Below are positions 1,625 through 22,945 of a stretch of DNA of 64,000 bases, one piece after another. Source of the stretch: Ostrea edulis (lineage: Eukaryota). Positions within the stretch are counted from its first letter, which is position 1, and each line of letters starts with the position of its first letter. The stretch lies in NCBI RefSeq assembly GCF_947568905.1, contig NC_079164.1:16368001-16432000 (forward strand), given 5' to 3'. The position numbers were made by a program, and so were the translations under genes. The notes beneath the pieces are model-generated. The model was not told the DNA's origin. It did not search any database and worked only from the letters and a program-made list of their open reading frames with translations.

Positions 1625-1873
1625 TTAGAATTTTCTTGTCGAACCCCGAATAAAGCTCCTAAGGAACGTCCATTTTTGTTTTAAGTCTCCAAAAATGGCA
1701 TCTTTAAGTCGATTTTCAAGAAGTGCGAGAAAGTTTAACCTTATATCAGAATATTCACGATCTATGTCGTCTCCGATTTCTTGTAATCTCCGGGCAACAT
1801 CGTGAATTATTTTTTCTTGGTACTCATCGGTCTGTGTAAAATCAGTACATACTGTAGATACTGTACAATCCAT
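1625..1873 (-). CDS. BH3-only-like protein A (82 aa, single coding exon)
   Basis: MDCTVST...QEKIIHDVARRLQEIGDDIDREY...LKDAIFGDLKQKW...RKF*. The core VARRLQEIGDDID (1760-1798) fits h1-small-x-x-L-x-x-I-G-D-x-h4-D. The ATG at 1873 has strong context (CAAAATGG). The track's ATG at 1963 lies only ~17 nt from the TATA box, so it is probably upstream of the TSS. Paralogous to 14732-14959 and 22514-22756. Confidence 0.8.
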   Translation of the reverse strand: MDCTVSTVCTDFTQTDEYQEKIIHDVARRLQEIGDDIDREYSDIRLNFLALLENRLKDAIFGDLKQKWTFLRSFIRGSTRKF

Positions 1874-1953
1874 TTTGAAAATATTTTCTGTTCGGACGCT
1901 GAAACTTCTACCATTAAAACTTAGGGGTACCGCAAGGCAGCCGAGGAAATTTA

Positions 1954-2079
1954 TCGATGCCATAACATTGTTGAGTAGACTTATATACTAGTTGTTCAAC
2001 TTGGTCCAAACCAAAGCTACCATACGATTGGCTTAAAATCTGGGTCAGTAGCCTAAGCTTCTGTTACGAGGGAAATCAC
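1954..2079 (-). promoter_or_regulatory. Core promoter of BH3 gene A
   Basis: TATATAAG at 1987-1980, CCAATC at 2031-2026, CAGTAGCCTAA at 2046-2056 (+), and kB-like GGGAAATCAC at 2070-2079 (+). Order and spacing match genes B and C. Confidence 0.7.
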
Positions 2080-3699
2080 TTATCTGAGCAGTATTACAGT
2101 ACTGAAAGGTTGATGACCTACTGAAAGGTATGGGATGGAATTAGGGTAATGATTATTCATCACATGATGCATATTCATTGAACTCTTCAAAAAATGAAAT
2201 AAATGCATACTGTGAATTTCTTTAACCACTCATTTACTGTTACACAAAACATGAAACTGATTTTTAGATTTTATGCAATTTAAATATTTTCTTTTAATGA
2301 ATTATGAAATGTGATATTTTGCATAACGTCTGAATATACTTCGAAAATTCATCTGTTTTCTATAATTGTCACTACCATGAGCTTGTGGTTCGCTGATGCA
2401 ATTTTATTCTGAATATATAATATCTTTTTATTAACATCTTGAGATTTAGTAGGAGATAAAGATTTTGAAGCCTACTAATTAATACTTGTGTCTGTTGTAC
2501 CCGATCCAAATTAACCTAAAATAGCCGGGGCCACTGATCGGAAAAGGTGTGAAATGACCGTCGTGTTTAATACGCTATACAAACTGAAAACCGCATTAGA
2601 AATTAACAATCACTTTACTTTTATTGTGCACATTCGGCTGTTCAACTGCAGGTGTGAATGTATTACAAGTAATTTACTATCATTACACGATTTTAAACAC
2701 TTCTAATGGGTTTTCCATTCACAGTCCTGTTGATCTTCTAATCACAGTAGACATGACTCAGTTTGAGACATCCATATATTTCTATCTACTTATTCCATAT
2801 TTCCCTCTTTGCTCAACAAATCCAAAATGACACCACAATATTATTCTTGTTTAAGATCATAATAGAAAACCTGAAGAAAGACTTTATAGGCACTGTCTTT
2901 ATCCTACCTTATAGTCAATTATTTGAATAACTGCTTGTATATTGCTTAGATTAAAAGAGTATTTATAATCTAAAAACAATTGCGTTGACCTACAGTTGAA
3001 ACAGTAAATTCTTCTTTTTTTAGACAAACTTCAGAAAAGGGCGTTTTTGTATTTTTAGCTTTATTCATTCCAACTCGGGGACAGCGGTAAGAAACCAACA
3101 TGTTGTGTAGTTTTTATTTTTTTTTTCATTTTGCAAAAAGGTTAAAAGACATTTGCATAAACAAATTTGCGAAGGTGTAGAAATCAACAATGCAAATTAC
3201 AATTGAAAGAACTTCTTTTCTTGAAATACTGAATCACTGGAAACCTAAAATTGGGACTAATTGCAAATGAATTCTGTCCTTTTATCACATCTCTCTCATT
3301 TACTGTCATACGTCGACACATAGCAAACTTCATTACGGGGAATCGACTTTGGTTAAGGGCTGGAAGTCTTATAATAAAGGTACAGGAAAATCTGCCAATC
3401 TTTTAATCAAATCCTTGGGTTTCCCGACTCTTCCTGGTAATGCGATCTAACGCATCAATTAGGGGATATCTGTGAGGATCTAGTGAAAACTCACAAGAAA
3501 AGGGTACTGACCACACGTTTATGCGATCGATGGGACTTCATTTACAGTATCAAATTGGGTCTTCCTGGCAAAATTGATTGCAAAGCGTTACATTTTACAT
3601 CCTGTCATTTAATTCTAGAAAATAAATGTCAAGAGAAATGATCTGTTTTTCTTATTATCGGTTTTGATTAAAACTTTTGTGATGAGGAATTATCATTAT

Positions 3700-5308
3700 C
3701 TATTTCTTATAATTTTTAAATTTTTGTGAGAAAATGTGTTTTCGACGAAAATGCATTTTCATTTGTTCCTGTGTAAATGCTTTCAAAACTTCACGCGTTC
3801 CATCAACAATTATCCTTTCACCATTTTCACGCACAAAACTACATGCAAGGGATTGATAACAACAGCATGAAATGCTGATGACTGCGTCATTATGTATATG
3901 CACAAATAAAACAAAATAATTAATTACCACACCGATTATTATAATTAACATTATCATTATGAAACCTTATTTGACAGTTTTGCTTTTTTTACAATATAGA
4001 TTAAACTCGAGCAACAATTTGTCATCCCTGTTAGTGAGTAGTTTTGCTGCATATGCTCACTGATAAAATCAATGTGTATACGGTGAGAGTGTTCGGTGAG
4101 ACTTGTGCACTATTGATGTGTGTATGGCAGGTGCACAAGCCTCAGAGGACGGAGGGATAACCGACTAATTGGAACTGAGGTCACTGATTTATAAGTAATA
4201 ACCCAATCTGCTTGATATACTTTGATTTATGTGTATGCATCTTCATATCATTAATGTGTGCGCTTCACCTTGATGGACATGTCGATCAACGGTTTTCTGT
4301 ATCGTGTGGGGATGCTTGAAAGAAAGAAAACCGAATTAGAATTATTATCAATAACATTATTCATGGATGGGTGAATAATATTTGAATTATTATTCTTTAT
4401 AAGAAAAAACCAGAATCCTTTTAAAAATACGCAAATTGCGTAAATATATATGTTTAATTATTTTGTAAAGCATTTTCATATATGCACTAAATTTTTAAAA
4501 TTAAAGACAATAAATACAATGTAAATTCATTTTAATGCATTTTTTTCCAAAATAAAGATTGAACAAAATGTAGTATTTAATGTATGATTTAGTTAAACTG
4601 CACATTGGTTGACGCCACGATGTTTAGGTCCAAAATTGATATCGTAGACCACTCGCGGCATGGTTGACTACAATATTGATTAAAATTCTATGATATTCTA
4701 TAGAATTAGGCGGATATAGAATTTTTTGTACCTCTCTCCATCACATCACTGTAAACTGTATTTGACTGTGTCTACTGGTAGTACATGTACACGCGCATGT
4801 ATTAAACTATTCTGTAGTACCAGTGCCTAAATGCATATTGATGGAAAGATTTCGGGAATGTAAATTTCCTTTGTAGTAGGGTTTACCCTTTTTCCTATAC
4901 CTTTACAAGTAATGTCAAGCAGTCCACTAGTGGTATTCGAGTCTAATGATCGAGTGATAATCATTTTGGATTTTAAATTCTGAATGAAGTTAAGCTAAGC
5001 TCATTACCGTGTGGATCTTTTTTTTATCAGAATGAATAGGATGTAGGTGGTAATTTTAACTGTCCAGTTTCGGAAACACTTCACAGCCTGTTCACACGTT
5101 AATCTGAAATATAAAACAAACATGCATTTTTTAGAGATTCGTAAATCCTATTCCGATTCATACAAATTTAACTGACCGTGAAACACTTTAATACGATTAT
5201 TATGGGGCGTCATCCTTACTGATTTTACACATCGAAGAATAGCATACACATGTAGTACCGTGCATGACGTATAGTAATTTCTCTTCTCTTTAATTCATCT
5301 TCACTCAT
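3700..5308 (-). CDS. Speculative 3-exon small ORF (5308-5259, 5103-5008, 3838-3700)
   Basis: GT-AG sites give in-frame phase-2 joins: MSEDELKRREITIRHAR / LTCEQAVKCFRNWTVKITTYILFILIKKRSTR / FVRENGERIIVDGTREVLKAF...KK*. No recognisable domain, and the first donor (GTACTA) is weak. Confidence 0.2.
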
Positions 5309-8077
5309 TGTAGGATAGTACTGAAAAATATATACCATAAAAATAAAATAGTATTAGAATAAAGTTAGAACCTTACAAATACAACAGATAAAGAAAACTT
5401 AAGGTAAACATATTGGAGTTAATCATTGTAAATGCTGAATGTCTTGCAGACTTTTATATTTGCCTTTGTTTCATTGGCCATTGATCATTTTCTGTTATGA
5501 TATTCTATTACTTTGTAGTGTTCATATCAAATAATTATGATTCATTTTCCTCCTACTATTTCAGTTATAAATTTATCTACTACTTCGCTAAAAGTAGACT
5601 AGTATATACATGTATATATATAATGCTCAACAGAAGGGCGAGGGTCAGTGACTGTAGGAAGGAAATAAAACAGAATCAGGTTCAACACAGGAGATCGTGT
5701 AGTATACAAACAATCCTACATTAAACACATTAGAATTCGTTGTCGTTTTCACAATTTTTTTTTCAATGTTGTGTACTTCGATTCATGAACACCTGTCACC
5801 AGGTTGGGTAAGGATTACTATATTTAACCCCTGAATATATAATCCCCTACAGGTGTCCTCATAATGCTTGATATAAGCCCCACAAATGCACTGTGAAGTG
5901 GTTCCTATATAGACTGTGCAATAAGGTCTTGCAAACAAAATAAGCATTGTTAATGGAATGACGTGTAGCTAGTGTACATGGAATTACTGAAGTTAATATG
6001 ATGTTTGTGTGGAAAGAATAGGAATATATTATTTGATATATTTCATCGCGTTTATAGAAAAATAAGATAGTGCATATATTACTGTAAACAATGCGAGAAA
6101 TTTAAATCTTCTCTTAAGATTCGTGTAAAAATATAATTACGGATTCGGGGGGGGGGGTATTTTACAGAAAGGTACGCGTCGTCCGCCAGCTGTATCGATA
6201 GAGGGTGTGTGCAACCTCAATTACAGTTATTCCCAATTAGTAAAAATTATGCGTTTTGCAATTCAATATCATGCTACATAATTTGTAATATAATTGTTTT
6301 CTTTTTAACCATTTTTCTTAGTACAATTTATCATTTTCAGGAAGGATTTTCTCTTTGAGTTAGTCGTTAGTTCCGGTAGAATCTCGAACCCGACTTCATT
6401 TATCCGTACTTCGTATTGCTATTGCAAAAAGTTAGTTTAGGCAATGCTTTAAATTTTATGTTCGCTATGTGTTTTAAAAAGTTTGGTTATTCTTGATGCA
6501 CATAGCTTTACTGTCTATATTCAACAGAAATCAAAGTAGATGTACATGTATTGATGTGTAATGTGCTAATGGAGATGAACGATCGGGCGGGGTATTCATA
6601 ACTATGAATAATTAGGGTTGCTAACAAAAATGCTTCACCGATTTCTTGACTTAATAGAAGTTGACGTATTTATAATTTTACTCTTACCGTAATATGTCAT
6701 TTTCTATGCAAATGCAATGCAATTAGCTGAATAAACATCACAAATTCCTTTTTTTTTATTTCCAGTTAACAAGAGCACCTAACCGATACCCTATATATGT
6801 ATGTCTCGTATATCATACAACAAAGCATTTTTAAAACTCTGTAACGATTGCAGTAAATATGTTAAAAAGTTCACATATTCCACTTCTACCCCAAAAGCAA
6901 ATGACACAGTTTAATAATTTCAGTCACTGCTAAATATTAAAGAGAAGGAAATAGCAACATCCATACCCTTGCCGTTTTTATTTTGATTTGAATTACTTGT
7001 GTTGGAAGTATTTGTATGCTGCACAGATGAAATTGAAAGGAGACTGTTTAATTTCATTGATGTGGAAAAGAAGTGGAGTAACTATGTCCTAGATATTTTC
7101 CCACATAAGTTTCAAATCTGTACCATGATGTTGCTATGCATACATGTAAACGTGTTAGGAATTACAGTAGTATACAACATATGACTATCAAGGTGTCAAA
7201 ATAAGAAATTTATTATCAAATAACATGGTATTAAATTGTATTATCACTATTGATTATAGTGCTGTTTTGTTTAGCTGCAATACACATACACTGCTGATAA
7301 AATTTCGTTTTCCCACACGCTCTTATCTGTTGGAATACACCAGCGTTGGTAGAGCTAATTACATTGCCTCAACTGAAAAAAAAGTATCAGGCATGACTGC
7401 TTCATCAAAGCAGTAAGTGAACTTCGAATGCACGTGTGAATTTTGACACTGAAATATACACTTTAAGTAACATGTAACTATTCTAGAAAATTCATATTCA
7501 ATATAAAACACATTTTATATAATGTAAATTGGGTATTTCTTTATCATCAAATTTGTTGTGCAAGACTACGTTCTTAGAGGTCTGAAAATAATAAATCATT
7601 AAAAATTTGTCGCAGCAATGAAATCAAGATCCATAAGAAAGTTAATGCATTGAGATTAGATAAATTGAAATGCTTACTTTTTAGCAAAATTTAGGACAAA
7701 CTTTGAAAATATATGAGCATGGAGGCAGTTCTAGTTTTGAATAGGTGTAAACCTTACCGAAAAACGTCTGCAAAGACATTGATATATTTGGCCAAAACAA
7801 TATCCAAGTACTTGACCAACGTATATGGTATAAGCAAAAAGATAACATAAATGGTGTCTCTATACAGTAGGTATGGAATTTAGAAAGCTAATCAAATTCA
7901 TTCATTTCAGTAATATATCCAATATCTATATATTGCTTACAACATATACCTGACAAGATTACAGCGACTACAATTTTCAAGTCTTCCCAGAATTTCCTTG
8001 AAGGTATTAAATCCCCATCTTGTTCTTCTACACAATATTTCATAAATGCTTTAAAGAGAAGGGGATTTGTTGTAATA

Positions 8078-9065
8078 TGAAAGGTGAAGATAACGAACAG
8101 TGATCAATCTCATAACTCGTATAAGCAATGCAAAATAGAGAGTTGGGCAAACACGGACCCCTGGACACACCAGAGGTGGGATCAGGTGCCTAGGAGGAGT
8201 AAGCATCCCCTGTCGACCGGTCACGCCCGCCGTGAGCCCTATATCTTGATTAGACCTAGGTAAACGGAGTTATCCGTAGTCAAAATCAGTGTGCCAAGAA
8301 CGGTCTAACAACCGGTATGAAACAAGTCAGACAGCATTTGACCGAATGATAGGTTGTATTGGCAAACTAGATTGTTATAACAACCATAGAATTTGCGAAA
8401 TACTGTCTTTAAACGAGACTGTTGAAACACCTGCACCATCAACTTCTTTGTCAGTAGCCTGCCTCGATTTAAAAACTGACCTTACGTAGAACAAGCTCCT
8501 GCGTATCGAATTAGTTGAGATATAAACACCATATGCAGGTGATTATGGAATATTGCTATATAAATATGGAAACATGACGATGCAGAAGCTGAATTCATCC
8601 CGTATGTCATAAAATTGAGTTGTTAGTTTGCCGTTAATATATACTTTCAATAAAATATCTAAGTATGATGCAGACGTGGACGACTCTGTGGTTTCTTTTA
8701 TTTCGAGTTCACAGGGATATATCGAATCGACGTATGAATGAAAGTTATTATTGTTGATAGATAAAACGCCGTTGATATATCTAAATGTCGAATTGAAGAC
8801 CACAGAGAGATATTTATTCTTCTCGTGTAGAAGTTTTTGAATAAATTCTGCTTCATCGGAAAATAAAAACAGGTCAGCTAACAAAGGAGCACAATTCATG
8901 CCCATGGAAATTTCAACAGACTGTTGGAAGAACTGATCACCAAAGACCACGAAGATATTGTTAATGAGGAACACCAGCATATTTTTTATTTCAACTTCAG
9001 AGTACTTGTGCGTGGAACCAGAGTGGTGTTAACAAAGTAATTTTTTGGATGACTGATCACTAGTT
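8078..9065 (-). mobile_element. Penelope-like retroelement, 5'-truncated, degenerate RT plus 3' terminus
   Basis: ORF 8543-8980 reads SMGMNCAPLLADLFL...FRYINGVL (YIDD mutated)...SASYLDILL...SNIP. The family terminus TGAAAGGTGAAGATAACGAACAGTGATC is at 8078. Confidence 0.85.
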
Positions 9066-9109
9066 ATAAATTTTGTGGCTTTTTTTTTTTTTTTTTTTTT
9101 TTAAAGAAG

Positions 9110-10012
9110 CAACTGTCTATGATATCCCTGTGAGCTCGAAATAAAAGACAACACAGAGTCGTCCACTTCTGCTTCATACTTAGATATTTTATTGAAAGTA
9201 GACATTAACGGCAAACTAACAACTCAATTTTATGACATACGTTTTTGGCACACTGATTTTGACTGCGGATAACTCCGTTTACCTGATCAGGATATGGGGC
9301 TCACGGCGGGTGTAACCGGTCAACAGGGAATGCTTACTCTTCCTAGGCACCTGATCCCACCTCTGGTGTGTCCAGGGGTCCGTGTTTGCCCAACTATCTA
9401 TTTTGTATTGCTTGTAGGAGTTATGAGATTGATCACTGTTCGTTATCTTCACCTTGCATTAACGGCAAACTGACAACTCAACTGTATGACAAACGGGATG
9501 ATTTCAGCTTCTCCATCGTCAACTTCCAGTATTTATGTAGCAATATTCCATTATCACCTGCATATGGTGTTTATATTTCTCAACTGATTCGATACGCAAG
9601 AGCTTGTTCTGCGTATAGTCAGTTTTTAAATCGAGGCAAGCTACTGACAAACAAGTTGATGGTACAGGGATTTCAACAGTCTCGATTGACGTCAGCATTT
9701 AGCAAATTCTATGGTCGTTATAACAATCTAGTTCGTCAATACAACCTATCATTGGGTCAAATGCTGTCTGATATGTTTCATACCGATTGTTAGGCCGTTC
9801 TTGGCACACTGATTTTGACTACGGATAACTCCGTTTACCTGATCAGGATATAGGGCTCAAGACGGGTGTGACCGGTCGACAGGGAATGCCTACTCCTCCT
9901 AGGCACCTGATCCAACCTCCGTGTGTCCAGGGGTCCGTGTTTGTCCAACTATCGACTTTGTATTGCTTATAGGAGTTACGAGATTGATCACTGTTCGTTA
10001 TCTTCACCTTCC
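9110..10012 (+). mobile_element. Penelope-like element, two tandem 3' pieces, inverted relative to 8078-9065
   Basis: RT thumb LYDKRDDFSFSIVNF...SNIPLSPAYGVYISQLIRYARACS...MFHTDC*. The terminal segment occurs twice, ending at ~9455 and ~10012. Confidence 0.85.
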
Positions 10013-10257
10013 ATCAAAGAGTGTAGTCAGTGTAAAGAAATTGTGGATTCTAAAGAAATTTTAGTACATTTGAAATGACAAAACTTTTTTTTCAAATCAA
10101 CAACATCAACACAGATGATTTTTCAACACTTTACATGACGAATCATCAAAATAAATCAAATACTAAACTTTTCCCACATCATAGACAGTTGTTTCTACAA
10201 CAGAAATGAAAAAAGGAAATATTCATATTTTGTGATCAGACATTCAAAAAATTACTT

Positions 10258-11845
10258 TCTAATATTCAATTATTACCTGCATATGGTGTTTATGTCTCTC
10301 AACTGATTCGATACACAAGAGCGTGTTCTGTGTATGATTAGTTTTTAAATCAACGCAGGCTACTGAAAAACAAGTTGTTGTTACAGGGGTTTCAACAGTC
10401 TCGTTTAAAGTAAGAATTTTGTATATTCTAAGGTCGTTATAACGATCTAGTTCGTCAATACAACCTGGCATTAGGTAAAATGCTGTCTGACCTGTTTGAT
10501 ACCAATTGTTAGGCCGTTCTTTACACACTGATATTGACTACGGATTACTCCGTATATCCTATCAAGATATAGGGCTCACGGCGGGTGTGATCGGTCGACA
10601 GATAATGATTACTCCTTCTAGGCACATGATTCCCCTTATGGTATGCCTAAGGGTCCGTGTTTACCTAACTCTAAATTTTGTATTCCTTATAAGAGTTATG
10701 CAATTAGATCCCTGTCGTTATCTTCACTTCTTCGTAGTCAAACTTTTCCTTGATTACTTCATTGTCTTTGGCTTATTTCCTTGTTCATATGACAGACATA
10801 ACTGCCTTCACTAAGAACTATAAAGGACTAGAAAGCTTTCTATTGTTTAAAAGTCCATATATTGAATAGATTAACACATCTGTATCACTAAATACAATGG
10901 CATTGCTGGATATTAGATATTTACTTAAAACTTCTACATAAGAAAAAAATAATGTTGTGGCCTGCAGCTACACATTTAGATATATCGACGACGTTTTACC
11001 AATTCAAAAAATACTCAAGATCATTCATGATCAAGACATAAGACTCACAGCGGGTGTGACCTGTCGACAGGGGATGCCTACTCCTCCTAGGCACTCAATC
11101 CCTCTTCTGGTGTGCCCAGGAGTCCGTGTTTGCCCAACTCTCTATTTTGTATTCCTTATAGGAGTTATGAGATTGTTCATTGTTCGTTATCTTCACCTTT
11201 CATATCTCGCTTTAATATATTCCAAATGAACTGGAAATCGAAAACCAGTCTTCCACATCTGCTTCACATTTAGATATTTTATTGAAGATAAATGTTAATG
11301 ACAAACTAACAACTCAACTGTATGACAAAAGGAATTACTTCAAGTTCTCCATCGTCAACTTCCCATCTTTATGTAGTAATATTCCATTATCACCTGCATA
11401 TGGTGCACATCCCTCAACTGATTCGATATGCAAGAGCTTGTTCTGCTTATGGTCATGTTTTAAATCGAGGCAAGCTACTGACAAACAAGTTGATGATAGA
11501 GGGGTTTCAATTGTCTGGATTAAAATCAGAATTTTGCGAATTCTATGATCTTTATTGCGATCTAATTTACCAATACAAGCTGGGTAAAATGATGCCTGAC
11601 ATGTTTCATGCCAAATGAAACCGCTCTTTACACACTGAGTTTGACTACTGATTACTCCGTTTGCATACCCGATCGAGAAATATGGCTCATGGCGGTTGTG
11701 ACCGGTCGACAGGGGATGCTTACTCATCCTGGGCACATGATCCCGCCTCTGGTATGTCCAGCGGTCTGTGTTGGCCCTACTCTTAAATTTGTATTCCAAT
11801 TAGGAGTTATGAGATTGATCACTGTTCATTGTTTTCATCTTTTCC
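10258..11845 (+). mobile_element. Three further degenerate Penelope-like 3' fragments (10258-10730, 10955-11200, 11235-11845)
   Basis: Same RT-thumb peptides (FRYIDDVL at ~10975; QLIRYARACS) and the same terminal sequence. Confidence 0.8.
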
Positions 11846-12139
11846 TAAACTTAGTACATGAATTCCACAATTTTGAATGAAAGCCATATAAATACAATAT
11901 AAATAGTTTTTTCTGCTGAATGTCCAGAAATACATGCAATTTTTTTTTATGAAATATTCATTTTTCAATATATGATAAGTTAACACTAATCTAAGTTCCA
12001 TGGATTTTAGAAGTTTAGTAGAGTGAAGAGGGCTCATTACATGTTATATATCATAGGTATACAAAGAGTTTGACAGTTAGATGTCAAAAAATGAAGACAA
12101 TTTTTAAACACAATACATATTCAATACGAGATGTTCAAC

Positions 12140-12990
12140 TTAGCGTCATATGGGGCCTGGATATTAGTAATGAATGTTTAAGGTTTTCAAAAAGATATTA
12201 CTTCTCATTATGATCATGCTAAAAGTTTGCCTGCTTGGTGTCCGGAAGTAAATGCTTTCTAAAACGTATTGCAATGACAACATATGATCAACTAAACCCC
12301 ATCCTGGAGTCTGAACTCTAAAACCCAGGGGTCATAAATTTCACATTGCTTATCAAAATTATGCAAACATTTTTTACCTTCTTGCTTTCAAGGAGAAACT
12401 ATTTTCTGAAATATATTGCATTTCCAATAAATGATCAACTAAGCCCTGGTACCTGAGCCCTGGGGTCATGAATTTCACAACTTTGGAAAAGGGTTCAATG
12501 TCCATTTTAATCATACACATGCCTCCTTTGATATCCAGAACTAAAGAGGAATATATTCTAAGATACAATGCACCATTGATATGTTCAGGGGTCCTTGTTT
12601 TTCCTTCTCTTAAATTTGTATCTTTGATAGGATTTATGAGATTGATCACTGTTCGGTATCTTCACTTGCTAATTTGCAATATAAGACCAACTTAACCAAG
12701 GGCCTGAACCCAGAGTTAATTAATTTCACAGTTGTGGAAATGGCCCATTTCTCATTATAATTATGCAGTTTGACTGCTTGTTGTCCAGAAGTAAATATTA
12801 CATTGATTTTGATGGTTTTGGCCACACACCCTCAGGCCCAAGGAGACAGAGACATTGAAAAAATTCAGGTTTTATTCCTTTCATGCATATATGTTATAAA
12901 CTAGAATTAAGTAAAATTGCTCCAGCCGTTCCAGAGAAGAATCTGAAAATGTTCAAACACACGACTAACGAGTGACTTGGGTAACCTGAA
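12140..12990. mobile_element. Degenerate non-autonomous Helitron/HINE-like repeat
   Basis: Internal ggggtcat(g/a)aatttcaca repeats at ~12328 and ~12462. Ends in gagtgacttgggtaacctgaaaaa, resembling a common bivalve subterminal palindrome. Confidence 0.4.
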
Positions 12991-14614
12991 AAAGAGAAGA
13001 AAGAAAAATAAAAACCTTCACATAACCAATGATATGAGTTTGTAAATGTTATCAAATGAAAAGAAAGCAATTTCAACCGTTCAAACAAAAACTAAAGAAA
13101 CATGTACAAGTTCATCTCAAGTTTAGCGATCTTTAAGTCTTAGAAATGCTTGACTACCGTGACGTCAGCGATCCTTCTTGTACAATAAACTTACAATGTA
13201 TAGTATACCTTTGGGTAGTGGTATTTGACTCGTTACGATTGAACCTCAGCAGGTTTGTTTTCTTTCACTGCTGAAATTTGCAGAGTGAAGGATATATTGA
13301 AACCAACTTACCACCTGTAAAAATACATAAAACTTTCACAGCCTCTCTCTTTTACTGTTCAAACAATTCAGATGTTGTTCTATTTGTTCCTCAGTCTAAT
13401 CTACACGAATTTGCAGTGTATCTCATTCTGACATATTGTAGTTGATCTAAATAGCTTTTGTATCTTTTATAACAAAAGTTAGATACTCAGGACGCCCTTA
13501 TAAACGATGAAGTGACATCTGTAGGTTTTTTTCGTTTTCTTCTAAATCGCAATTTATTCTTATTCTCTTCCCTTTCCGCTAGTCCATGCAGTACAAATCG
13601 TCTCATCTGACAAATTCTTTTAACTAGCAATTCTGATATTTGAATGTTCATTCCCCCACAAACACAGAAATTAGCGCTCATCCTCAAAATGTATCAACCT
13701 GCATATGCACAGATGCTGATAGATGAAAATAACGAAATCGGATTGATCGACCCTGTTATGGTGTGAACTCTTTGCACCTGTCCATTGCTACAGTAGGATG
13801 ATTCCGTCAGATTCAGTCAGTGTTCAACACCTATCATCTATACAAAACAAGTCTTCTTCGAGATGTCAAACACGTGGATCTCATTATACCAACGGACATT
13901 GCAGGGTACGTTACCGTGAGAATAAAAATGACATAACTCACACGGGAATGTGTTGTTGTCCTATTGTTTCCCTCATTAGTGTTTTTTGCATCCACGTGAT
14001 TTTGTAATGACTGGGAAATAGTTAGCTTTTGTGCAACCCAATGCGTATAACATTGTACCTAGATGAACATTACGCCTTATGCTATGTACAAAATTCTTAT
14101 ATTACTTTTCGAAAGACTTTCATTGAACTCCCTGGACCTTTTGGCACATTTGTAAACCCCCTTTAGAGCAAAATGTGCGTCATTTGTAACTTTTGAATAA
14201 ATTTGTCATCAAACGACAAAAGATACACTGTTGATAGGAATGGTGGAAATTTATTACATCAACATTGGAATCATACACCGGTTGAAAAAATAAACAAAAT
14301 TATATAATGTATATGGCACATTAAAACTTTCTGAAATAAATTCAGAAATAAATGTTTCCTTTGTAGTATTTTCACAAAATCACCGGTAACAGTTCATTTG
14401 ATTTCTTTTCGTTCTTTAGCATCAAAATGCTAATGCATAATACTGCGTGTATACACCGGGAAAGTATATGGCACAATGAAATGGATTGCACAAGAATATC
14501 GTAAACAGTTTCCTCAGAGGTGTCCACGCTACATCCCATCAGTCAAGAGAATGCGACATTTAGCCATCCTGATGCTGTTGATAAGTAATAAAATGGATGT
14601 CCATATCCCATCTT

Positions 14615-14728
14615 CTGAAAAATAGATCACAATGATAAGAATGTGGACTACTTGATCCTTACTTTAGATGTTTGTAAAATCTTGGATAAAAGTCTTTTGT
14701 GAATGGTTAACATCTAATGTGTTCTTAC
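14615..14728 (-). other. 3'-UTR intron of BH3 gene B (114 nt)
   Basis: Donor AAG|GTAAGA lies 3 nt after TGA. Acceptor is ctatttttcag|A at 14615. Candidate AATAAA at 14255-14250. Confidence 0.65.
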
Positions 14729-14731
14729 CTT

Positions 14732-14959
14732 TCATTCTATTAAATTTGTTAAGAGGGCAAATTGAGCAAGCTTTTCCTTCCAACTCTCTAAAATTGCATC
14801 TTTTAACTTCCTTTGCATCATTTGCATTAATTCCATCTTTAATGAAGAGTCCTTTTTGTCGAATTCATCTCCAATTTTTCTCAATTTGTTCACAATTTCG
14901 TCAATTATCTTCTCCTGGTCTTCCGCGTCACTGCCTTCTGCTACTCTGGTTATATCCAT
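14732..14959 (-). CDS. BH3-only-like protein B (75 aa)
   Basis: MDITRVAEGSDAEDQEKIIDEIVNKLRKIGDEFDKKDSS...KLKDAILESWKEKLAQFALLTNLIE*. BH3 core at 14858-14896. First ATG is at 14959 (CAAAATGG); the track ORF starts at an upstream TTG. Shares QEKII and LKDAI with gene A. Confidence 0.8.
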   Translation of the reverse strand: MDITRVAEGSDAEDQEKIIDEIVNKLRKIGDEFDKKDSSLKMELMQMMQRKLKDAILESWKEKLAQFALLTNLIE

Positions 14960-15042
14960 TTTGACTGCAGATTGCTTAAAAAGAAGTCTCTGTTTTCTTT
15001 CTTTGCTTTCAATACCACAATTATTGTAGCAACTCAACGATT

Positions 15043-15176
15043 TCGATATATAATGCAGATATCTTGACTTGTAAACTTATATACAATTTGTTCAATATGG
15101 CTGACGTAAAGTTGTAATGTGATTGGTTGAATGAAACTAGGCCAGTAGTCTAATGCCCTGTTGGAAGGGATATCCT
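15043..15176 (-). promoter_or_regulatory. Core promoter of BH3 gene B
   Basis: TATATAAG at 15083-15076 in a context matching gene A (TTGAACAAxTxGTATATAAGTxTAC). CRE/ATF-like TGACGTAA at 15102-15109, CCAATC at 15126-15121, CAGTAGTCTAATGCCCT at 15143-15159, kB-like GGGATATCCT at 15167-15176. Confidence 0.75.
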
Positions 15177-15263
15177 CCTTTATATTAATGCTATCATGAT
15201 ACATGTTCTGCAGGTGGATGACCTACGCCACCTGCAGGATAGACAAACCTTTAATAAAACGTT

Positions 15264-15265
<2 letters not shown>

Positions 15266-15315
<50 letters not shown>
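15266..15315. repeat. (TA)n microsatellite upstream of gene B
   Basis: About 25 perfect TA units. Confidence 0.95.
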
Positions 15316-15319
<4 letters not shown>

Positions 15320-17059: not shown

Positions 17060-17700
17060 TCTAGTAAGAACAGGAAAGGCAAATATAACTAACAGTGATC
17101 AATCTCATAACTCCCAGGCGGAATAAAAAATAAAGAGTTGGGCAAACACGGACACCTGGACATACCAGAAGTGGGGGTCAGGTGTTAAGGAGGAGTAAGC
17201 ATCCCTTTTCGGACAGTCACATCCGTCGTGAGCCCTATGTCTTGATCAGCTAAACGGTGTAATCCGTCGTCAAAATCAGTGTGCAATGATGGCCTAACAA
17301 TCGGTATGATTTGATTGATTTTATATTCTCTAACGTCTCACTCCAGAATTTTTCACTCATATGGAGACGTTCAATCGGTATGGAAAACGTCAAACCGCAT
17401 TTGACTAAATGATAAGTGATAAGGGCAAACTAGATAGCTATAACAACTATAGAATTTGCGAAATGCAGACTTCAAACGAGACTGTTGAAACCCCTGTAGC
17501 ACCAACTTGTTTGTCAGTAGCCGGTATCGATTTAAAAACTGATCATACGCAGAACAAGCTCTTGAGGTCTTGTGTATCGAATCTGTTGAGATATATAAAC
17601 ACCATATGCAGGTAATAGTTGAATATTGCTCATTAACATGGGGAGTTGACGATGGAGAAGCTGCAATCATCCCGTTTGTCATACAATTGACATCCAAACA
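17060..17700 (-). mobile_element. Penelope-like 3' fragment
   Basis: RACSAYDQFLNRYRLLTNKLVLQGFQQSRLKSAFRKFY...FHTD* plus the family terminus. Confidence 0.8.
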
Positions 17701-19529
17701 CTTTCAAAAATGCACTAAAAATTATAGCATTGCTCTTGCATTGAAGAAATATATGCCATTATTGTTACTTGAACCTCGTACTTAAGGAGGTTTTACCGCT
17801 ATGTCATAATTTCGTAATACCATTATGGGTAAAGTACTTGTGATAAAAAGTAGAAAAGATATAAGAATGAAAAGGTAAAGGTAGATATTATGATATGAAC
17901 AAGTAATTTCCGGGATGTACATTGATATATTACAGGTATCAGACGCCGAAAGTTAACAAAACAGAGTATAGCTCTCGAAGATTTCATTGTATATAGTGGA
18001 ATTGCCATGCGTCTTTTGTCTAATACATGTACATCTATAACCGATTTCACGTGAAACGGTTCATAATAAAAGGAAAGGTGAACAATTGAATTATGTAAAA
18101 CTTTTTGTTTTCAGTCCATCCGAAAAACGATTTCATTCAAAATGACAGGTCACTAGCTTTGAGTGAAGTGCCACAGATTTTGACTTATGCATGCACTCCG
18201 TTTATAGAGCTCATGGTGTATATGACCGGTCGACAAGGGATGCTTACTCCTCCTGTGCACCTGGGGTCCGTTTCACAAAAAGGCCTACGACCATATGAAA
18301 GTTTCGTCGGACGTAAAAACACGACTAAGTCACAAAACCGGACTAATATGCGTTTCATAAAACAGACTACGTTTGCACCCGACTAAATTTATGGCTTAAA
18401 TTTAGGCTTGCCCATGACCATGTGAAACTCTTAGTCTGTTAAGAACTAAACAACTAAACAAATAATGGCGACGGTGTTGATTTTGAAGCAACGCAGACAG
18501 CGGCAAAAAAGGAAAGGATTTTCAGAGATCGATCAAATTGTGATGTTTTTGTTAATTCCTATCGTTATAAACTTCAAACAGTTCTGCTTAAAGTGGAATC
18601 CATTGCATTAATGCATTGTAAAAACAAATAGTCACACCTAATATTTCAAAAATTGTTTTGTATGATATATATAGTGAAAAATGTTTCTGGGAACAAACTT
18701 ATGGGCAACTACTGTACATGTATATCTGATGATGAATATTGAAAGCTTTCAATTTAAAAAATAATTCATTTGACTTGCATTTATACGAAAACCACGGTAC
18801 GTAAAACGTTACAGGCATGTTTTAAAATTATTCTATTTTAGTACCAAGGAACATTAATGTCGAGCGTCTAGAAATTTATTCTCTCCAATCAATCAAGTTT
18901 AAAGAAAAAGAAATTGTATCCACTGACCTATAAGTTACAATTTTTATATCCTCCAAGTTGTGATGGTAATCTATTAAAGAGGGTAAAGACTGCATATTGA
19001 GTCCTTATTTTAAATTTTGGGGAAGAGTGGGGGGAAGGTAAATTCCAACAACATGTTATAGCATTTTTCCTTTTAATATTCATCTGAACGTTTGGTATAT
19101 TTCATCTTTTGAAAGACTAAACTACTTACTATTTGGTGATTTCGTTCCAGATTCCCTTCTTTTTCTCCGAAGTGATATCTCTAAAAAATTTGCAAACAGA
19201 ATTTCACTATTTTCGCGAATTGATGATGCTAGCACTTGTTATTCATCATCCGTTCAATTACGTTTTCTTTTAATGATAAATACGTCATTATATTTTGTCT
19301 TGAATACTGAATTAGACGACAGTAGCAATGCACGAAATATACATGCTTTCCTGCAATGAACTGTTGAAATGTAGAAGTTATACACGCAATATACATGCTT
19401 GATGACACTACAATTCCAGTAATTTTGTTGCGTTAATGTGTATTTCACACATGTATATACAAGTGAAACTAATTTACCATGTGCTTCCCAGGTCATTTTA
19501 ACTATTACCCTAGTGAACTCAAATTAAAA

Positions 19530-20500
19530 GACACCACGGAGTCTTCCATATCTGTTTCACACTTGAACATATTATTGAACATAGCTGTTAACGGCATATT
19601 AACAACTCAACGTTAACAAAAACGGGATGACTTCAGCATCTCCATCGTCAACTTCCCATATTTATGTAGCAACATTCCATTATTTCTTACATATTCTGTT
19701 TATCTGTCCTAACTGATTCGATATCCAAGAGCTTTTTATAGGTATTGTCAGTTTTTAACACGAGGTAGGCTATTGACAAACAAGTTGATGTTACAGGTGT
19801 TTCAACAGTCTCCTTTAAAGTCAGCATTTCTCAAATTATATGTCGTTATAATGATGCAAGGTGAAGATAACGAACAGTGAACAATCTCATAACTCCTACA
19901 AGCAATACAAAATAGATAGTTGGGCAAACACGGACCCCTGGACACACCAGAGGTGGGATCAGGTGCCTAGGAGGAGTAAGCATCCCCTGTTGATCTAATT
20001 TACCAATAAGACCCGCCATGACATGTTTTATACCACTTGAGTCTGTTCTTTACACACTGATTTTGATTTTGACTACAAATTAATCCGTTTACCCGATCGA
20101 AAAATATTGCTCGTGTGAATGGTCGACAGGGGATGTTTACTCCTCCTAGGCACCTCTGTATATGTCCAGGGGCCCGTGTTTGCCCTAGCCTACTCTTAAT
20201 TTTGTATTCTTTATAAGATTTATGGGATTGATCAATATTTGTTATCTTCACTTTTTCAATATAACATGAAAAGGTCCGTTCTTGTTATAGAAAGTCAGGT
20301 AATATTTTGGCAATTACCTTCATCTGGACAACTTCTGTTTGTATTTTGCATTCCCGATTTTGACTTTTTTCGGCTTCTCAATAAGATCGCAGGTTGTTTT
20401 CGAATTGGTCCAATTGCGACATCAACTTGAAAAATAGAAACTTGGCTTGCTTATGGGAGTTATGAGATTGATCACTGGTCGTTATCTTCACCTTTCATTC
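19530..20500. mobile_element. Rearranged Penelope-like fragments in alternating orientation
   Basis: Plus-strand RT thumb at 19530-19855, minus-strand terminus at 19858-20000, plus-strand termini at 20000-20250 and 20445-20500. Confidence 0.75.
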
Positions 20501-20577
20501 TTATGTTTAGATTTTCAACCACTCTCGTTGTGAAATTAACAAATATATCATATCATACGATAACCAGGCTTGAAGAC

Positions 20578-21342
20578 AATAAACTGAGAATAGACTTAAG
20601 GTGGATTGATCCTCATTTGACTTATCAATATGAATGGTTAAAAGTTGAAAAACTGTATTAATTTCCACTCAATATAATTTAATTTAATAAATAACCGAAG
20701 AAAATGTGTATGTTGCCACCTTTTTAAAGATGTCCGACATACAAAAACAGAAGTATATATCAACATTAAACAATCACACAATTTCGTTAAACAGAATAAT
20801 GAAAATTAATAAATACTTACTGAAATGACAAATTTTAAATGTCAACAGTTTAAGAAAACTGCTAATTCATAGATATATCAAGATTAATTGGGGATATTAG
20901 GGCAATCATTGTGTCATAGACATGCAGTATAGGAAATTCCAGCATAGGAGTTATTGCCCTTGACAACATTTTTAAAATTATAAATAATTTATTATCTATG
21001 GAAAATAAAACTTTTTCAGTATCAAAAGTTTACCAAATTTTTTTACTTTATTCAGTGAATGAAATTCCTCTGAAAAATATATTTCTACTATGCGCAAAAT
21101 TTAATTAAATAAAGATTTTGCAAAAACCTGTGACATCACATGAGGATCGATCAACCTTAAGTCAATTTTTTTAATTATTATTTACACCTTAAAGATTCAT
21201 CTAGCACAGATATTTGAAAAATGATGGTTTATTTAAAAAATCAATGCAAACATATACTGAATTTTTTTTTTTTTTTATAAAAATTATTTCAAAAGTATGT
21301 TGGATTTTAGATTTAGACTTAAGTTTTTCTCAGTTTATGGTC
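20578..21342. mobile_element. MITE-like element with ~22-bp imperfect TIRs; related internal sequence at ~47800-48090
   Basis: Left end ataaactgagaatagacttaag versus right end cttaagtttttctcagtttat. The internal block 20760-21000 resembles 47810-48060. Confidence 0.55.
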
Positions 21343-22303
21343 TCGAGGCAGCACTTCATTCGTCTGGCAACATAAAAACATAATTTCTATAAATATAAAG
21401 TATATACAAACCAGTGTGAGTGGTTTAAGATTTAAAAAACCTAATTTCAAGCATTTGAAGGAAATCGTCAGATAATGATTTTGCAGTTATAAACATACAT
21501 AAGAATTTAGTTTTAAAATAATTTTTATTGAATATAGAAAGCAACAATAAGAAATAACACACCATTGCTTTGGATGTGGGAATCACTAACAAATAATTAT
21601 GAAAACGATATGAAAGTAACAAAACATCTGGCGAATGTAAACCAAATGGTACAGAGACAGAGTTAATCGAAGCCAATCATTACAATGGCTTATACACAAA
21701 ACACATTACAAATGTGAAAAAAGTAAATGTAGCATGAAATAAGTTTTGCTGATTTGACTGAAAAATAATGGTACGCTGTGTATAAATAATCTATGTTTAC
21801 TTTGACTTCACTAATGGTAAACAGGAATTCATTTTAACTCACTAGAAAAAGATAAACAACATGCTTAATTATACTTAGTCAAAATTGTCTTTACTTAACT
21901 GAAACAAAACTGGAAAATGGACATAAATTGATATCATGTTTGAAATTTCAATTCATAAACTAGTGAAAAATACTCAACATTGTTCATACAAGTTTCTATA
22001 ATACACCGGATACACATTACTGACGTTTGGCACATCAATCCTGAGATAAGTAAAACCGTTTCACCTGAGATCGTTTAAGTGTGCAGAAAGTACAAGAGTT
22101 CTCGTAAAGTTTATGTATAATTATATATCATCCAAGTAGTATATATATGTACATATTTATATACATATATATGATATCACAGCTCCAATGTGAAACGCAC
22201 GACGAATATCCACTTTCACTCTGGTAAAACTATCAGCACATCATATTGAGCGTTATGACTCTTGTGTATACAGCTGCCCATGTAGCTAATTGATATATAC
22301 AAT

Positions 22304-22488
22304 CTGCAAATTAAAATTACATTTATTAGTATATCATTGGTTTGAATAAGTTATAATTCATTTGACAATATAGATATGTTTTAATTCATTGATGAGTGTT
22401 ATGAACAATTTTATAATTCATTTGACAATATAGATAGGTTTTAATTCATTAATGAGTGTTATGACCAATTTTACATCAAAGTACTCAC
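22304..22488 (-). other. 3'-UTR intron of BH3 gene C (185 nt), containing a 60-bp tandem duplication
   Basis: Donor AAG|GTGAGT lies 25 nt after TAG. Acceptor is ttttaatttgcag|A at 22304. The unit ttataattcatttgacaatataga...tgagtgttatga(a/c)caatt occurs twice at ~22352-22472. Confidence 0.65.
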
Positions 22489-22513
22489 CTTAAGATCCCA
22501 GACTCTGTAGGTA

Positions 22514-22756
22514 CTATACAGCCATTGCAAGGTGTTTCAGTGAAACAAACATCAATTCTTCGAAGTACCTCCTCATCCTTTTTGCAGTATTACTTCTGTC
22601 TAAGGAATGTGTTTTGTCCAACTCGTCTCCAATTGTCCTCAACCGTTCAGCAACAATTCGTATTGTTTTCTGCTGATTCTCTATGTTGGAGATTTCGATA
22701 TCACCAAAATCATTTACTTCTATAACCTCCATGATGTGTTTATGTTCCTGCTCCAT
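22514..22756 (-). CDS. BH3-only-like protein C (80 aa)
   Basis: MEQEHKH...NQQKTIRIVAERLRTIGDELDKTHSL...RYFEELMFVSLKHLAMAV*. The core VAERLRTIGDELD (22616-22654) closely resembles BIM (IAQELRRIGDEFN) and BIK (LALRLACIGDEMD). Confidence 0.8.
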   Translation of the reverse strand: MEQEHKHIMEVIEVNDFGDIEISNIENQQKTIRIVAERLRTIGDELDKTHSLDRSNTAKRMRRYFEELMFVSLKHLAMAV

Positions 22757-22809
22757 TGCTACAACTATCTGAACTTACATGTAACTGCTTCGTACGTGGA
22801 AAGTAAATG

Positions 22810-22945
22810 TATCGATACTAAATTCTCATTCAATAGGCCATTATATATACATACTGAGATATACATGTCAATATCCAATGTGCTGATCCGATTGGACACC
22901 AGTAACTGTGTCAGTAGTCTAATGCCCTACTGTCCGGGATACTCG
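22810..22945 (-). promoter_or_regulatory. Core promoter of BH3 gene C
   Basis: TATATATAA at 22849-22841, CCAATC at 22895-22890, CAGTAGTCTAATGCCCT at 22912-22928 (identical to gene B), kB-like GGGATACTCG at 22936-22945, and TATCGATA near the inferred TSS (22810-22817). Confidence 0.75.

What the first reader, a model, noticed from the sequence alone, without database searches (positions are those of the whole stretch)
1980..22945. Four-box promoter with fixed spacing shared by all three BH3 genes, including an unknown motif and a kB-like site
The proteins are highly diverged, yet each promoter has the same order: TATA, then CCAAT (45-50 bp away), then CAGTAG(T/C)CTAA(T)GC (20-22 bp further), then a GGGA-start decamer exactly 24 bp further in all three. 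The decamers GGGAAATCAC, GGGATATCCT and GGGATACTCG each match 9/10 of GGGRNWYYCC. The 17-mer CAGTAGTCTAATGCCCT is identical in B and C, and I cannot assign it to a known factor. Inference: a rigidly spaced NF-Y / unknown factor / Rel module that couples immune NF-kB signalling to apoptosis.
Basis: partly seen in the sequence, partly recalled or inferred. Interest (0 to 1): 0.72.

Follow-up and report, generated by a model that had tools for sequence, protein, structure and literature searches.

The report
Shared conserved promoter of oyster BH3-like genes
Three neighbouring small death-gene-like (BH3-motif) genes of the flat oyster keep the same ~200-base promoter, which other oyster-like species also conserve, but its NF-kB-like box and its "rigid" spacing do not hold up across species.

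Summary
All four boxes sit where stated, upstream of three minus-strand BH3-motif genes, and the CAGTAG-to-GGGA distance is 24 bp in all three. The 17-mer is identical in B and C.

This is not a four-box module. It is one homologous proximal promoter of about 200 bp, with at least eight colinear conserved blocks. At DNA level it is kept as well as or better than the coding sequence, while the flanking DNA shows no similarity.

Orthologous A-type and B-type promoters from three other species keep TATA, CCAAT and box 3. The composite CTACTKRC-N8-20-CCAATC marks every family gene but one. Box 3 is a decayed half of a 19-bp palindrome (GGTCAGTAG-N-CTACTKACC), so a dimeric factor next to NF-Y is likely.

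The kB-like reading is weak:
- 9/10 matches occur at chance frequency in the window.
- The GGG is missing in three of four A-type species.
- The conserved B-type core is AGGATATCC.

Spacing drifts across species: box 4 to box 3 by 21-26 bp, and CCAAT to TATA by 33-48 bp.

Probable RNA contigs for gene B include the TATA box, so a start site 25-30 nt downstream of it is not confirmed.

The same scan also noted the gene cluster itself, in a separate finding.

The parts
1625..1873 (-). Gene A coding sequence, 82 aa, BH3 motif LQEIGDD
   Evidence: Sub-threshold Pfam BID BH3-region match, E 8.6e-5.
1953..1958 (-). A: ATCGAT block about 29 nt downstream of TATA (DRE/Cut-like from memory)
   Evidence: Kept in the sister species and spY A-type promoters.
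1980..1987 (-). A: TATATAAG on the gene strand (TATA-type box)
   Evidence: ATATATAAGTC is invariant in the four A-type species.
2027..2031 (-). A: CCAAT box (AGCCAATCG)
2043..2056 (-). A: box 3, TTAGGCTACTGACC on the gene strand
   Evidence: A 14-nt run invariant in the four A-type species, always 24 nt from CCAAT.
2070..2079 (+). A: kB-like decamer GGGAAATCAC (box 4)
   Evidence: The GGG is absent in the sister species, spX and spY A-type promoters.
2107..2119 (-). A: block 5, AGGTCATCAACCT on the gene strand
   Evidence: AGGKCRWCAACC in four species
14732..14959 (-). Gene B coding sequence, 75 aa, BH3 motif LRKIGDE
14447..15087 (-). Extent of the probable RNA contigs of gene B. They are colinear with the genome and include the TATA box.
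   Evidence: runs X4 and X5. The kind of run is not on record.
15042..15047 (-). B: ATCGAA block about 36 nt downstream of TATA
15076..15083 (-). B: TATATAAG on the gene strand
15122..15126 (-). B: CCAAT box (AACCAATCA)
15140..15159 (-). B: box 3, including the 17-mer CAGTAGTCTAATGCCCT (plus strand)
   Evidence: The homologous site in spX and spY is the palindrome GGTCAGTAG-N-CTACTTACC.
15167..15176 (+). B: GGGATATCCT (box 4). The conserved core is AGGATATCC on the gene strand.
15212..15224 (-). B: block 5, AGGTCATCCACCT, inside the Ostrea-specific palindrome GCAGGTGG...CCACCTGC
22514..22756 (-). Gene C coding sequence, 80 aa, BH3 motif LRTIGDE
22810..22817 (-). C: TATCGATA block downstream of TATA
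22841..22849 (-). C: TATATATAA on the gene strand. It is deleted in the sister species' C ortholog.
22891..22895 (-). C: CCAAT box (GTCCAATCG). It reads CCAAA in the sister species.
22912..22928 (-). C: box 3 17-mer, identical to that of B
   Evidence: Three substitutions in the sister species' C ortholog.
22936..22945 (+). C: kB-like decamer GGGATACTCG (box 4)
22971..22983 (-). C: block 5, TGGTTCATTAACCT, inside the palindrome GCAGGTT...AACCTGC

Best explanation
The three boxed regions are one homologous proximal promoter, about 200-230 bp long. It was inherited by three tandemly duplicated BH3-motif genes and is held by purifying selection in at least four oyster-like species.

Read on the gene (minus) strand, the blocks are:
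1. block 5 (RGGTCRTYMACC)
2. CATGTA/ACTGTA
3. TTAATA
4. box 4 (GAKWTYCC; AGGATATCC in the B lineage)
5. box 3 (TAG-N-CTACTKRCC)
6. CCAAT
7. TATAWAAG
8. ATCGAT

Shown: the homology, the colinearity, the cross-species conservation and the restriction to this gene family.

Inferred:
- NF-Y on the CCAAT box and TBP on the TATA box form the basal unit.
- Box 3 is a decayed half of a 19-bp palindrome lying 24-29 bp (2-3 helical turns) from CCAAT. It probably binds a still unidentified dimeric factor that works with NF-Y and co-regulates the paralogs.
- Box 4 and block 5 add lineage-specific inputs.
- The identical 17-mer of B and C may owe its identity partly to gene conversion within Ostrea.
For: - Paralog promoters align far above shuffles (z = 20.2 for A-B, 14.1 for B-C, 4.8 for A-C). 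DNA 200-440 bp further upstream and the 3' flanks do not (z <= 1.6). The CDS gives z = 10.4, 9.6 and 1.1.
- The four A-type species keep TTAGGCTACTGACC, a fixed 24-nt step to CCAATC, and ATATATAAGTC. The four B-type species keep GGTCAT, ACATGTA, ATTAATA, AGGATATCC, CTACT and CCAATCA.
- The composite CTACTKRC-N8-20-CCAATC occurs once per family gene, on the gene strand, in 28 of 29 fetched loci. It occurs 3 times in the window against 0.02 expected.
- There is no tRNA or Rfam hit at the blocks.
- The only other box-3-like hit (26422) lies in a transposon-like ORF, with no CCAAT box, TATA box or BH3 ORF beside it.
- The palindromic form of box 3 is seen in spX and spY B-type promoters.
Against: - No binding or expression data exist for any box.
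- The start site is not mapped. Contigs of two probable RNA runs cover 14447-15087 and so contain the B TATA box. That fits a start upstream of it, or a second start.
- The sister species' C ortholog has lost CCAAT (now CCAAA), has three changes in box 3 and lacks the TATA stretch, yet keeps an intact ORF. The module is therefore dispensable, or that copy is decaying.
- The species behind the related loci are not named, so the evolutionary depth is only inferred from 40-80% protein identity.
Confidence: 0.75

Rival explanations
1. One reading: a rigidly spaced NF-Y / unknown factor / Rel module, in which the GGGA decamer is a functional kB site that lets NF-kB signalling induce the BH3-like genes.
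For: - All three decamers match GGGRNWYYCC at 9/10, at an identical 24-bp offset.
- GGGATATCCT is kept exactly in B-type promoters of O. edulis, spX and spY.
- The spX B-type promoter also carries a perfect GGGAAATTCC at L019:2082-2091.
Against: - 9/10 matches occur 55 times in the window against 50 +/- 10 by chance.
- In the A lineage the GGG is unique to O. edulis; the other species read GAGAAATCAC, AAGAAAACTC and AAGAAAAATC.
- The sister species' B-type has AGGATATCCT with changed flanks. The invariant part is the 8-bp palindrome GGATATCC, which lacks the GGAA/TTCC half-sites and the 5+1+4 geometry of kB sites (from memory).
- Spacing is broken by a 4-bp insertion in the sister species' A-type promoter and varies 21-26 bp overall.
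- The perfect site in spX is species-specific. About 0.4 such sites would be expected by chance in the promoters examined (own estimate).
Confidence: 0.12
2. The similarity reflects recent gene conversion between the paralogs (concerted evolution of a short promoter tract), not selection on factor binding sites.
For: B and C of O. edulis share an exact 17-mer. Its left half, GGGCATTAG, differs from the GGTCAGTAG found in B-type promoters of spX and spY. The sharing is therefore compatible with exchange inside Ostrea.
Against: - The same blocks are conserved between species in which the surrounding DNA is unalignable. Conversion within one genome cannot produce that.
- A and B differ from each other inside box 3 in the same way in all four species.
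- Similarity comes in short blocks separated by diverged spacers, not in one continuous tract.
Confidence: 0.1
3. The blocks nearest the gene (the TATA-like box and ATCGAT) are part of the transcribed 5' leader. The real core promoter of at least gene B is the CCAAT-adjacent AT-rich stretch CAAATTAYA, with a start near 15087-15089.
For: - Contigs of runs X4 and X5 end at 15086 and 15087, which is 3-4 nt upstream of the TATA box.
- They cover only the gene, while DNA runs X1 and X3 cover the whole stretch.
- CCAATCA[A/C]AT[T/A]A[C/T]A is conserved in all four B-type promoters.
Against: - The kind of runs X4 and X5 is not on record, and contigs cannot prove molecule ends.
- One X4 contig also breaks inside the CDS at 14853-14861, so breaks occur for other reasons.
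- TATATAAG is a perfect TATA consensus kept in 9 of 10 promoters.
- In spX and spY the TATA box lies at CCAAT+33, on top of the would-be upstream start.
Confidence: 0.25
4. The block is a dispersed repeat or a transposon or tRNA-derived fragment that only happens to lie near the genes.
For: One box-3-like 12-mer lies in a transposon-like ORF at 26422-26431.
Against: - The 17-mer and the composites occur only at the three genes in 64 kb.
- ARAGORN and Rfam find nothing there.
- In 28 loci the composite is always upstream of a family gene, on its strand.
- About 0.24 chance hits of the degenerate 12-mer are expected in the window (own calculation).
Confidence: 0.02

Closest known systems
TATA + CCAAT (NF-Y) proximal promoters, including the mammalian Bim promoter, where NF-Y is required (from memory: Hughes et al. 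2011)
   Same: A perfect TATAWAAG lies 33-48 bp from a CCAAT pentamer with NF-Y-type flanks (RRCCAATCR). That places CCAAT near -65 to -80 if transcription starts about 30 nt after TATA. The pentamer is invariant in 9 of 10 promoters.
   Different: The start site is unmapped, and one data set places it upstream of TATA. NF-Y binding is untested. The genes are an unannotated mollusc family, not Bim orthologs.
MHC class II S-X-Y module (RFX / CREB / NF-Y enhanceosome with stereospecific spacing)
   Same: A CCAAT (Y) box is paired with a conserved upstream element at a near-constant distance of 2-3 helical turns, shared by a family of co-regulated paralogs. The box 3 to CCAAT step is exactly 24 nt in four A-type species.
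   Different: Box 3 (TAG-N-CTACTKRCC) does not fit the RFX X-box. Only a weak X-box-like reading of box 4 plus GTAACAG exists in the A lineage, and it rests on my memory of the consensus. Spacing varies 24-29 bp in the B and C types. No S or X2 equivalents were shown.
kB sites of Rel/NF-kB targets (GGGRNWYYCC)
   Same: Each O. edulis decamer matches at 9/10. GGGATATCCT is kept in three of four B-type promoters.
   Different: There is no 10/10 match in O. edulis. The GGG is not conserved in the A lineage, the conserved core is GGATATCC, and matches of this quality occur at chance frequency.
Transcriptional control of BH3-only genes elsewhere (p53 on Puma/Noxa; FoxO and NF-Y on Bim; Snail/bHLH/Hox/TRA-1 on C. 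elegans egl-1), from memory
   Same: Small BH3-only-type genes are switched on mainly through compact, factor-dense promoters. The B-type promoters keep a p53-like half-site, GAACATGTAY. Ostrea B has CAGGTG/CACCTG E-boxes around block 5.
   Different: There is no full p53 site: the two CATG cores are 7 bp apart, not 10. The E-box pair is not kept in spX or spY. No FoxO site is conserved.

Membership tests
NF-kB / Rel binding site | Match to GGGRNWYYCC better than chance would give | tested here: not met
   All three match at 9/10 only. There are 55 such matches in the window against 50 +/- 10 in shuffles.
NF-kB / Rel binding site | Conservation of the GGG half-site in orthologous promoters | tested here: not met
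   A lineage: the GGG is present only in O. edulis, 1 of 4 species. B lineage: 3 of 4 species, with AGGATATCCT in the sister species. C lineage: the ortholog contig ends before the site.
NF-kB / Rel binding site | Binding by, and response to, a Rel protein | not testable with these tools
   This needs a gel-shift assay, ChIP or a reporter.
NF-Y CCAAT box | CCAAT pentamer with RRCCAATSR-type flanks, conserved in orthologs | tested here: met
   The sites read AGCCAATCG, AACCAATCA, GTCCAATCG and so on. The pentamer is intact in 9 of 10 promoters and reads CCAAA in the sister species' C ortholog.
NF-Y CCAAT box | Position about -60 to -100 from the start site | tested here: inconclusive
   CCAAT lies 33-48 nt upstream of TATA. 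The start site is unmapped. If gene B starts near 15087, CCAAT would be at about -37.
TATA box core promoter | TATAWAWR sequence | tested here: met
   TATATAAG in A and B, TATATATAA in C, kept in 9 of 10 promoters.
TATA box core promoter | Start site 25-35 nt downstream | tested here: inconclusive
   Probable RNA contigs of gene B reach 15086/15087 and so include the box at 15076-15083. Contigs cannot prove molecule ends, and the kind of run is unknown.
Rigidly spaced composite module (enhanceosome-like) | Invariant inter-box distances across orthologs | tested here: not met
   Box 3 to CCAAT is fixed at 24 nt within the A lineage only, and is 25-29 nt in B and 24-26 nt in C. Box 4 to box 3 is 21-26 nt. 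CCAAT to TATA is 33-48 nt.
Dispersed repeat / SINE / tRNA-derived element | Many copies unrelated to the genes, or a tRNA-like structure | tested here: not met
BH3-only proteins (context of the promoters) | BH3 motif L-x3-G-D-[ED] in a short protein with no other BH domains | tested here: met
   The motif is present in A, B, C and 13 relatives. Pfam BID matches are confined to its BH3 region, with E from 5.5e-5 to 1e-2, below the curated cut-off. Binding to Bcl-2 proteins is untested.

The most novel reading that the evidence does not exclude
The box 3 palindrome (GGTCAGTAG-N-CTACTGACC) beside the CCAAT box is the binding site of a so far undescribed dimeric regulator. That regulator would be the common upstream switch of an oyster-wide BH3-only-like gene family. 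Published surveys found no BH3-only gene in molluscs (PMC5550854), so this promoter signature would then be the entry point to how oysters trigger mitochondrial apoptosis.
Probability: 0.25. Interest if true: 0.7.

Novelty: new member of a known kind. Interest (0 to 1): 0.42.

Why it matters
Published work states that no BH3-only gene has been found in oysters or any mollusc (PMC5550854). A later survey of lophotrochozoan apoptosis still reports none from molluscs (PMC11463336).

If these small genes are the missing initiators, their promoter matters. It is compact, better conserved than the proteins, and shared across paralogs and species. That makes it the most direct handle on what turns cell death on in oysters, whether infection, stress or metamorphosis.

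The practical gains are three:
- a 14-nt family signature (box 3 + CCAAT) that finds unannotated family members;
- a short list of blocks for pull-down and reporter work;
- a warning that the attractive NF-kB reading rests on a chance-level match.

Tried and rejected
- **tRNA or SINE origin of box 3 and block 5 (A-box/B-box resemblance).** ARAGORN and Rfam found nothing there.
- **Logan contigs L001-L007 and L011-L017.** I hoped for transcripts, but they are colinear genomic contigs of O. edulis and give only alleles.
- **RNA runs.** None is on record as RNA. The single read-laying run gave contigs only.
- **The look-up of encoding contigs.** P0010, P0011 and P0063 are not on record, and P0012 came without DNA.
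- **The search for related loci on metagenome contigs.** The B-type alignment found no relatives. I did not use a second scan with the DNA signature, because by my estimate even the extended pattern would give hundreds or more chance hits.
- **Naming the species behind the run accessions through the literature.** This failed.
- **Earlier findings by sequence or by words.** These gave nothing on the motif.
- **Factor assignments considered from memory and not adopted.**
  - ZNF143/Staf and CTCF: partial matches, not conserved.
  - RFX X-box: weak, A lineage only.
  - E2F: TTTCCCTC in O. edulis A only.
  - p53: one conserved half-site in the B lineage, no full site.
  - FoxO, the C/EBP-ATF element and Myb: not conserved.
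  - Nuclear-receptor IR1 for block 5: AGGTCA becomes AGGTCG or AGGGCA in orthologs.
- No JASPAR or TOMTOM comparison was possible offline.
Full report
**What is there**

I did not verify that independently. Three small ORFs lie on the minus strand:
- A: 1625-1873, 82 aa
- B: 14732-14959, 75 aa
- C: 22514-22756, 80 aa

Each carries a BH3-type motif (LQEIGDD, LRKIGDE, LRTIGDE). They are 28-35% identical to one another. Pfam gives only sub-threshold matches, confined to the BH3 region of BID. The boxes of the finding lie upstream of these genes, so on the plus strand they read outward from each gene.

**Check of the observation**

All coordinates and spacings hold.

| Box (plus strand) | A | B | C |
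|---|---|---|---|
| TATATA | 1982 | 15078 | 22842 |
| ATTGG | 2027 | 15122 | 22891 |
| CAGTAG | 2046 | 15143 | 22912 |
| GGGAWA | 2070 | 15167 | 22936 |

- The CAGTAG-to-GGGA step is 24 bp three times.
- The 17-mer is exact in B and C and absent elsewhere in the window.
- The composite GATTGG-N-CAGTAGYCTAA occurs three times against none expected.

An ungapped view shows that CAGTAG to GGGAWA is a single homologous 34-bp segment without indels. The "fixed 24 bp" is therefore a consequence of shared descent, not by itself evidence of a spacing constraint.

**More than four boxes**

The alignment of the three regions and the gene-strand view show further shared blocks:
- AGGTKRATGAMC at 2107/15212/22971, flanked in B and C by different 7-8-bp inverted repeats
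- a CATGTA/ACTGTA block
- a TTAATA block
- an ATCGAT block 29-36 nt downstream of TATA

Local alignment of the segment from -200 to +40 around TATA gives z = 20.2 (A-B), 14.1 (B-C) and 4.8 (A-C) against dinucleotide shuffles. The next 240 bp upstream and the 3' flanks give z <= 1.6. The coding sequences give 10.4, 9.6 and 1.1. The promoter is thus the best conserved DNA of these genes.

**Related loci**

Protein searches and contig look-ups gave four kinds of loci:
- O. edulis alleles: L001-L007, L011-L017
- a sister species with orthologs of B (L008), A (L009, L010) and C (L018)
- "spX": L019, with B-like and A-like genes in tandem
- "spY": L020-L029, again with B-like then A-like genes in tandem

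None of these species is named in the data. The sister orthologs are not O. edulis paralogs, because they are missing from the many O. edulis population contigs.

The footprints are as follows.

| Lineage | Conserved across its species |
|---|---|
| A-type (4 species) | AGGKCRWCAACC; AGTACYRTAAT; TTAGGCTACTGACC, followed after exactly 24 nt by CCAATC; ATATATAAGTC |
| B-type (4 species) | GGTCAT..ACC; ACATGTAYCAT; ATTAATA; AGGATATCC; CTACT; CCAATCA; a TATA box |

Between these blocks the species are essentially unalignable, so the blocks are under constraint.

The signature CTACTKRC-N8-20-CCAATC occurs once per family gene, on its strand, in 28 of 29 loci. It occurs three times in the window against 0.02 expected. 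This excludes a dispersed repeat. ARAGORN and Rfam find nothing at the blocks. The only other box-3-like hit, at 26422, lies inside a transposon-like ORF with no gene beside it.

**Box 3**

In the spX and spY B-type promoters the site reads GGTCAGTAG-T/A-CTACTTACC, a near-perfect 19-bp palindrome. The O. edulis forms keep the right half (CTACTGRCC) and a decayed left half. A reads GCTTAGG; B and C read GGGCATTAG. A palindrome of this length argues for a dimeric factor, but I could not assign one.

B and C of Ostrea share a left half that differs from the B-type of spX and spY. Their exact 17-mer identity may therefore include gene conversion.

**Box 4 and NF-kB**

- Matches at 9/10 to GGGRNWYYCC occur 55 times in the window against 50 +/- 10 by chance.
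- In the A lineage only O. edulis has the GGG. The sister species has GAGAAATCAC, and spX and spY have AAG-type sequences.
- In the B lineage GGGATATCCT is exact in three species. The sister species has AGGATATCCT with five substitutions packed around an untouched GGATATCC core.
- spX has an extra perfect GGGAAATTCC between CCAAT and TATA, but it is species-specific.

I put Rel binding at about 12% overall. It is somewhat higher for the B lineage alone.

**Spacing**

| Interval | A lineage | B lineage | C lineage |
|---|---|---|---|
| Box 3 to CCAAT | 24 in all four | 25-29 | 24-26 |
| Box 4 to box 3 | 21-26 (4-bp insertion in the sister species) | 23-24 | 23 |
| CCAAT to TATA | 43-44 | 43 in Ostrea, 33 in spX and spY | 46-48 in O. 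edulis |

The architecture is colinear and roughly phased, but not rigid. The only invariant step is box 3 to CCAAT in the A lineage.

**Start site**

No run is on record as RNA. Runs X1 and X3 hold the whole stretch as one genomic contig. Runs X4 and X5 come from a different study and have far smaller contig sets. They hold only 14447-15086 and 14497-15087, colinear with the genome. I read them as probable RNA.

If that reading is right:
- B is expressed and is unspliced across the donor-like AAG|GTAAGA after its stop codon.
- At least some transcripts begin at or upstream of 15087, which is 3-4 nt upstream of the TATA box (15076-15083).

However, contigs cannot prove molecule ends. One X4 contig also breaks inside the CDS. 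The conserved ATCGAT at TATA+29 to +36 would suit a TATA-directed start. The point stays open.

**The odd one out**

The sister species' C ortholog (L018) keeps an intact 82-aa ORF. Its promoter, though, has CCAAA instead of CCAAT, three changes in box 3, and a deletion of the TATA stretch. Either that copy is being rewired or is decaying, or the module is not indispensable.

**Context and verdict**

The literature held here says that no BH3-only gene is known from molluscs. The gene family itself is the subject of another finding of this scan.

For the present finding:
- The promoter is real and conserved.
- NF-Y and TATA are reasonable assignments.
- Box 3 is a real, unassigned, family-specific element.
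- The Rel assignment, the rigid spacing and the immune-to-apoptosis coupling are not supported.

Noticed in passing
window 32086-32158 (+): tRNA-Ala (anticodon CGC), Rfam tRNA 68.5 bits. It is the only RNA family hit in the window.
   Followed up: no
window 8000-12700, 17300-20300, 25600-26500: Repeated transposon-like ORF fragments fill the spacers between the BH3-like genes, in both orientations. Typical peptides are ...MLTPPRHLIPPLVCPGVRVCP... and ...YARACSAYSQFLNRGKLLTNKL....
   Followed up: no
window 15266-15316: A (TA)n microsatellite lies directly upstream of the B promoter. Its length differs among O. edulis population contigs (for example L001), and conservation with the sister species ends near there.
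   Followed up: partly
window 14732-14734 and 22514-22516: Stop-codon polymorphisms. B is 75 aa in the window, but an 81-aa allele (P0002) is seen on more contigs. C is 80 aa in the window against an 88-aa allele (P0007).
   Followed up: partly
window 14720-14731 (-): A consensus splice-donor-like AAG|GTAAGA lies 3 nt after the B stop codon and is also present in the sister species (L008). The probable RNA contigs run through it unspliced.
   Followed up: partly
L019:2082-2091: A perfect kB consensus, GGGAAATTCC, lies between CCAAT and TATA of the spX B-type promoter. It is absent at that place in O. edulis, the sister species and spY.
   Followed up: partly
window 2160-2169; L019 about 6903-6911: An E-box is conserved about 215 nt upstream in A-type promoters. 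It reads TCACGTGAT in spX and spY, TCATGTGAT in O. edulis and TCACATGAT in the sister species.
   Followed up: no
window 23000-23007 (+): TGTGGGAA, a Su(H)/CSL-type consensus (from memory), lies upstream of block 5 of gene C only and is kept in O. edulis alleles.
   Followed up: no
L019 and L020: In two other species a B-like gene is followed 3-5 kb downstream by an A-like gene on the same strand. The B-then-A order of the O. edulis cluster therefore predates those species splits.
   Followed up: partly
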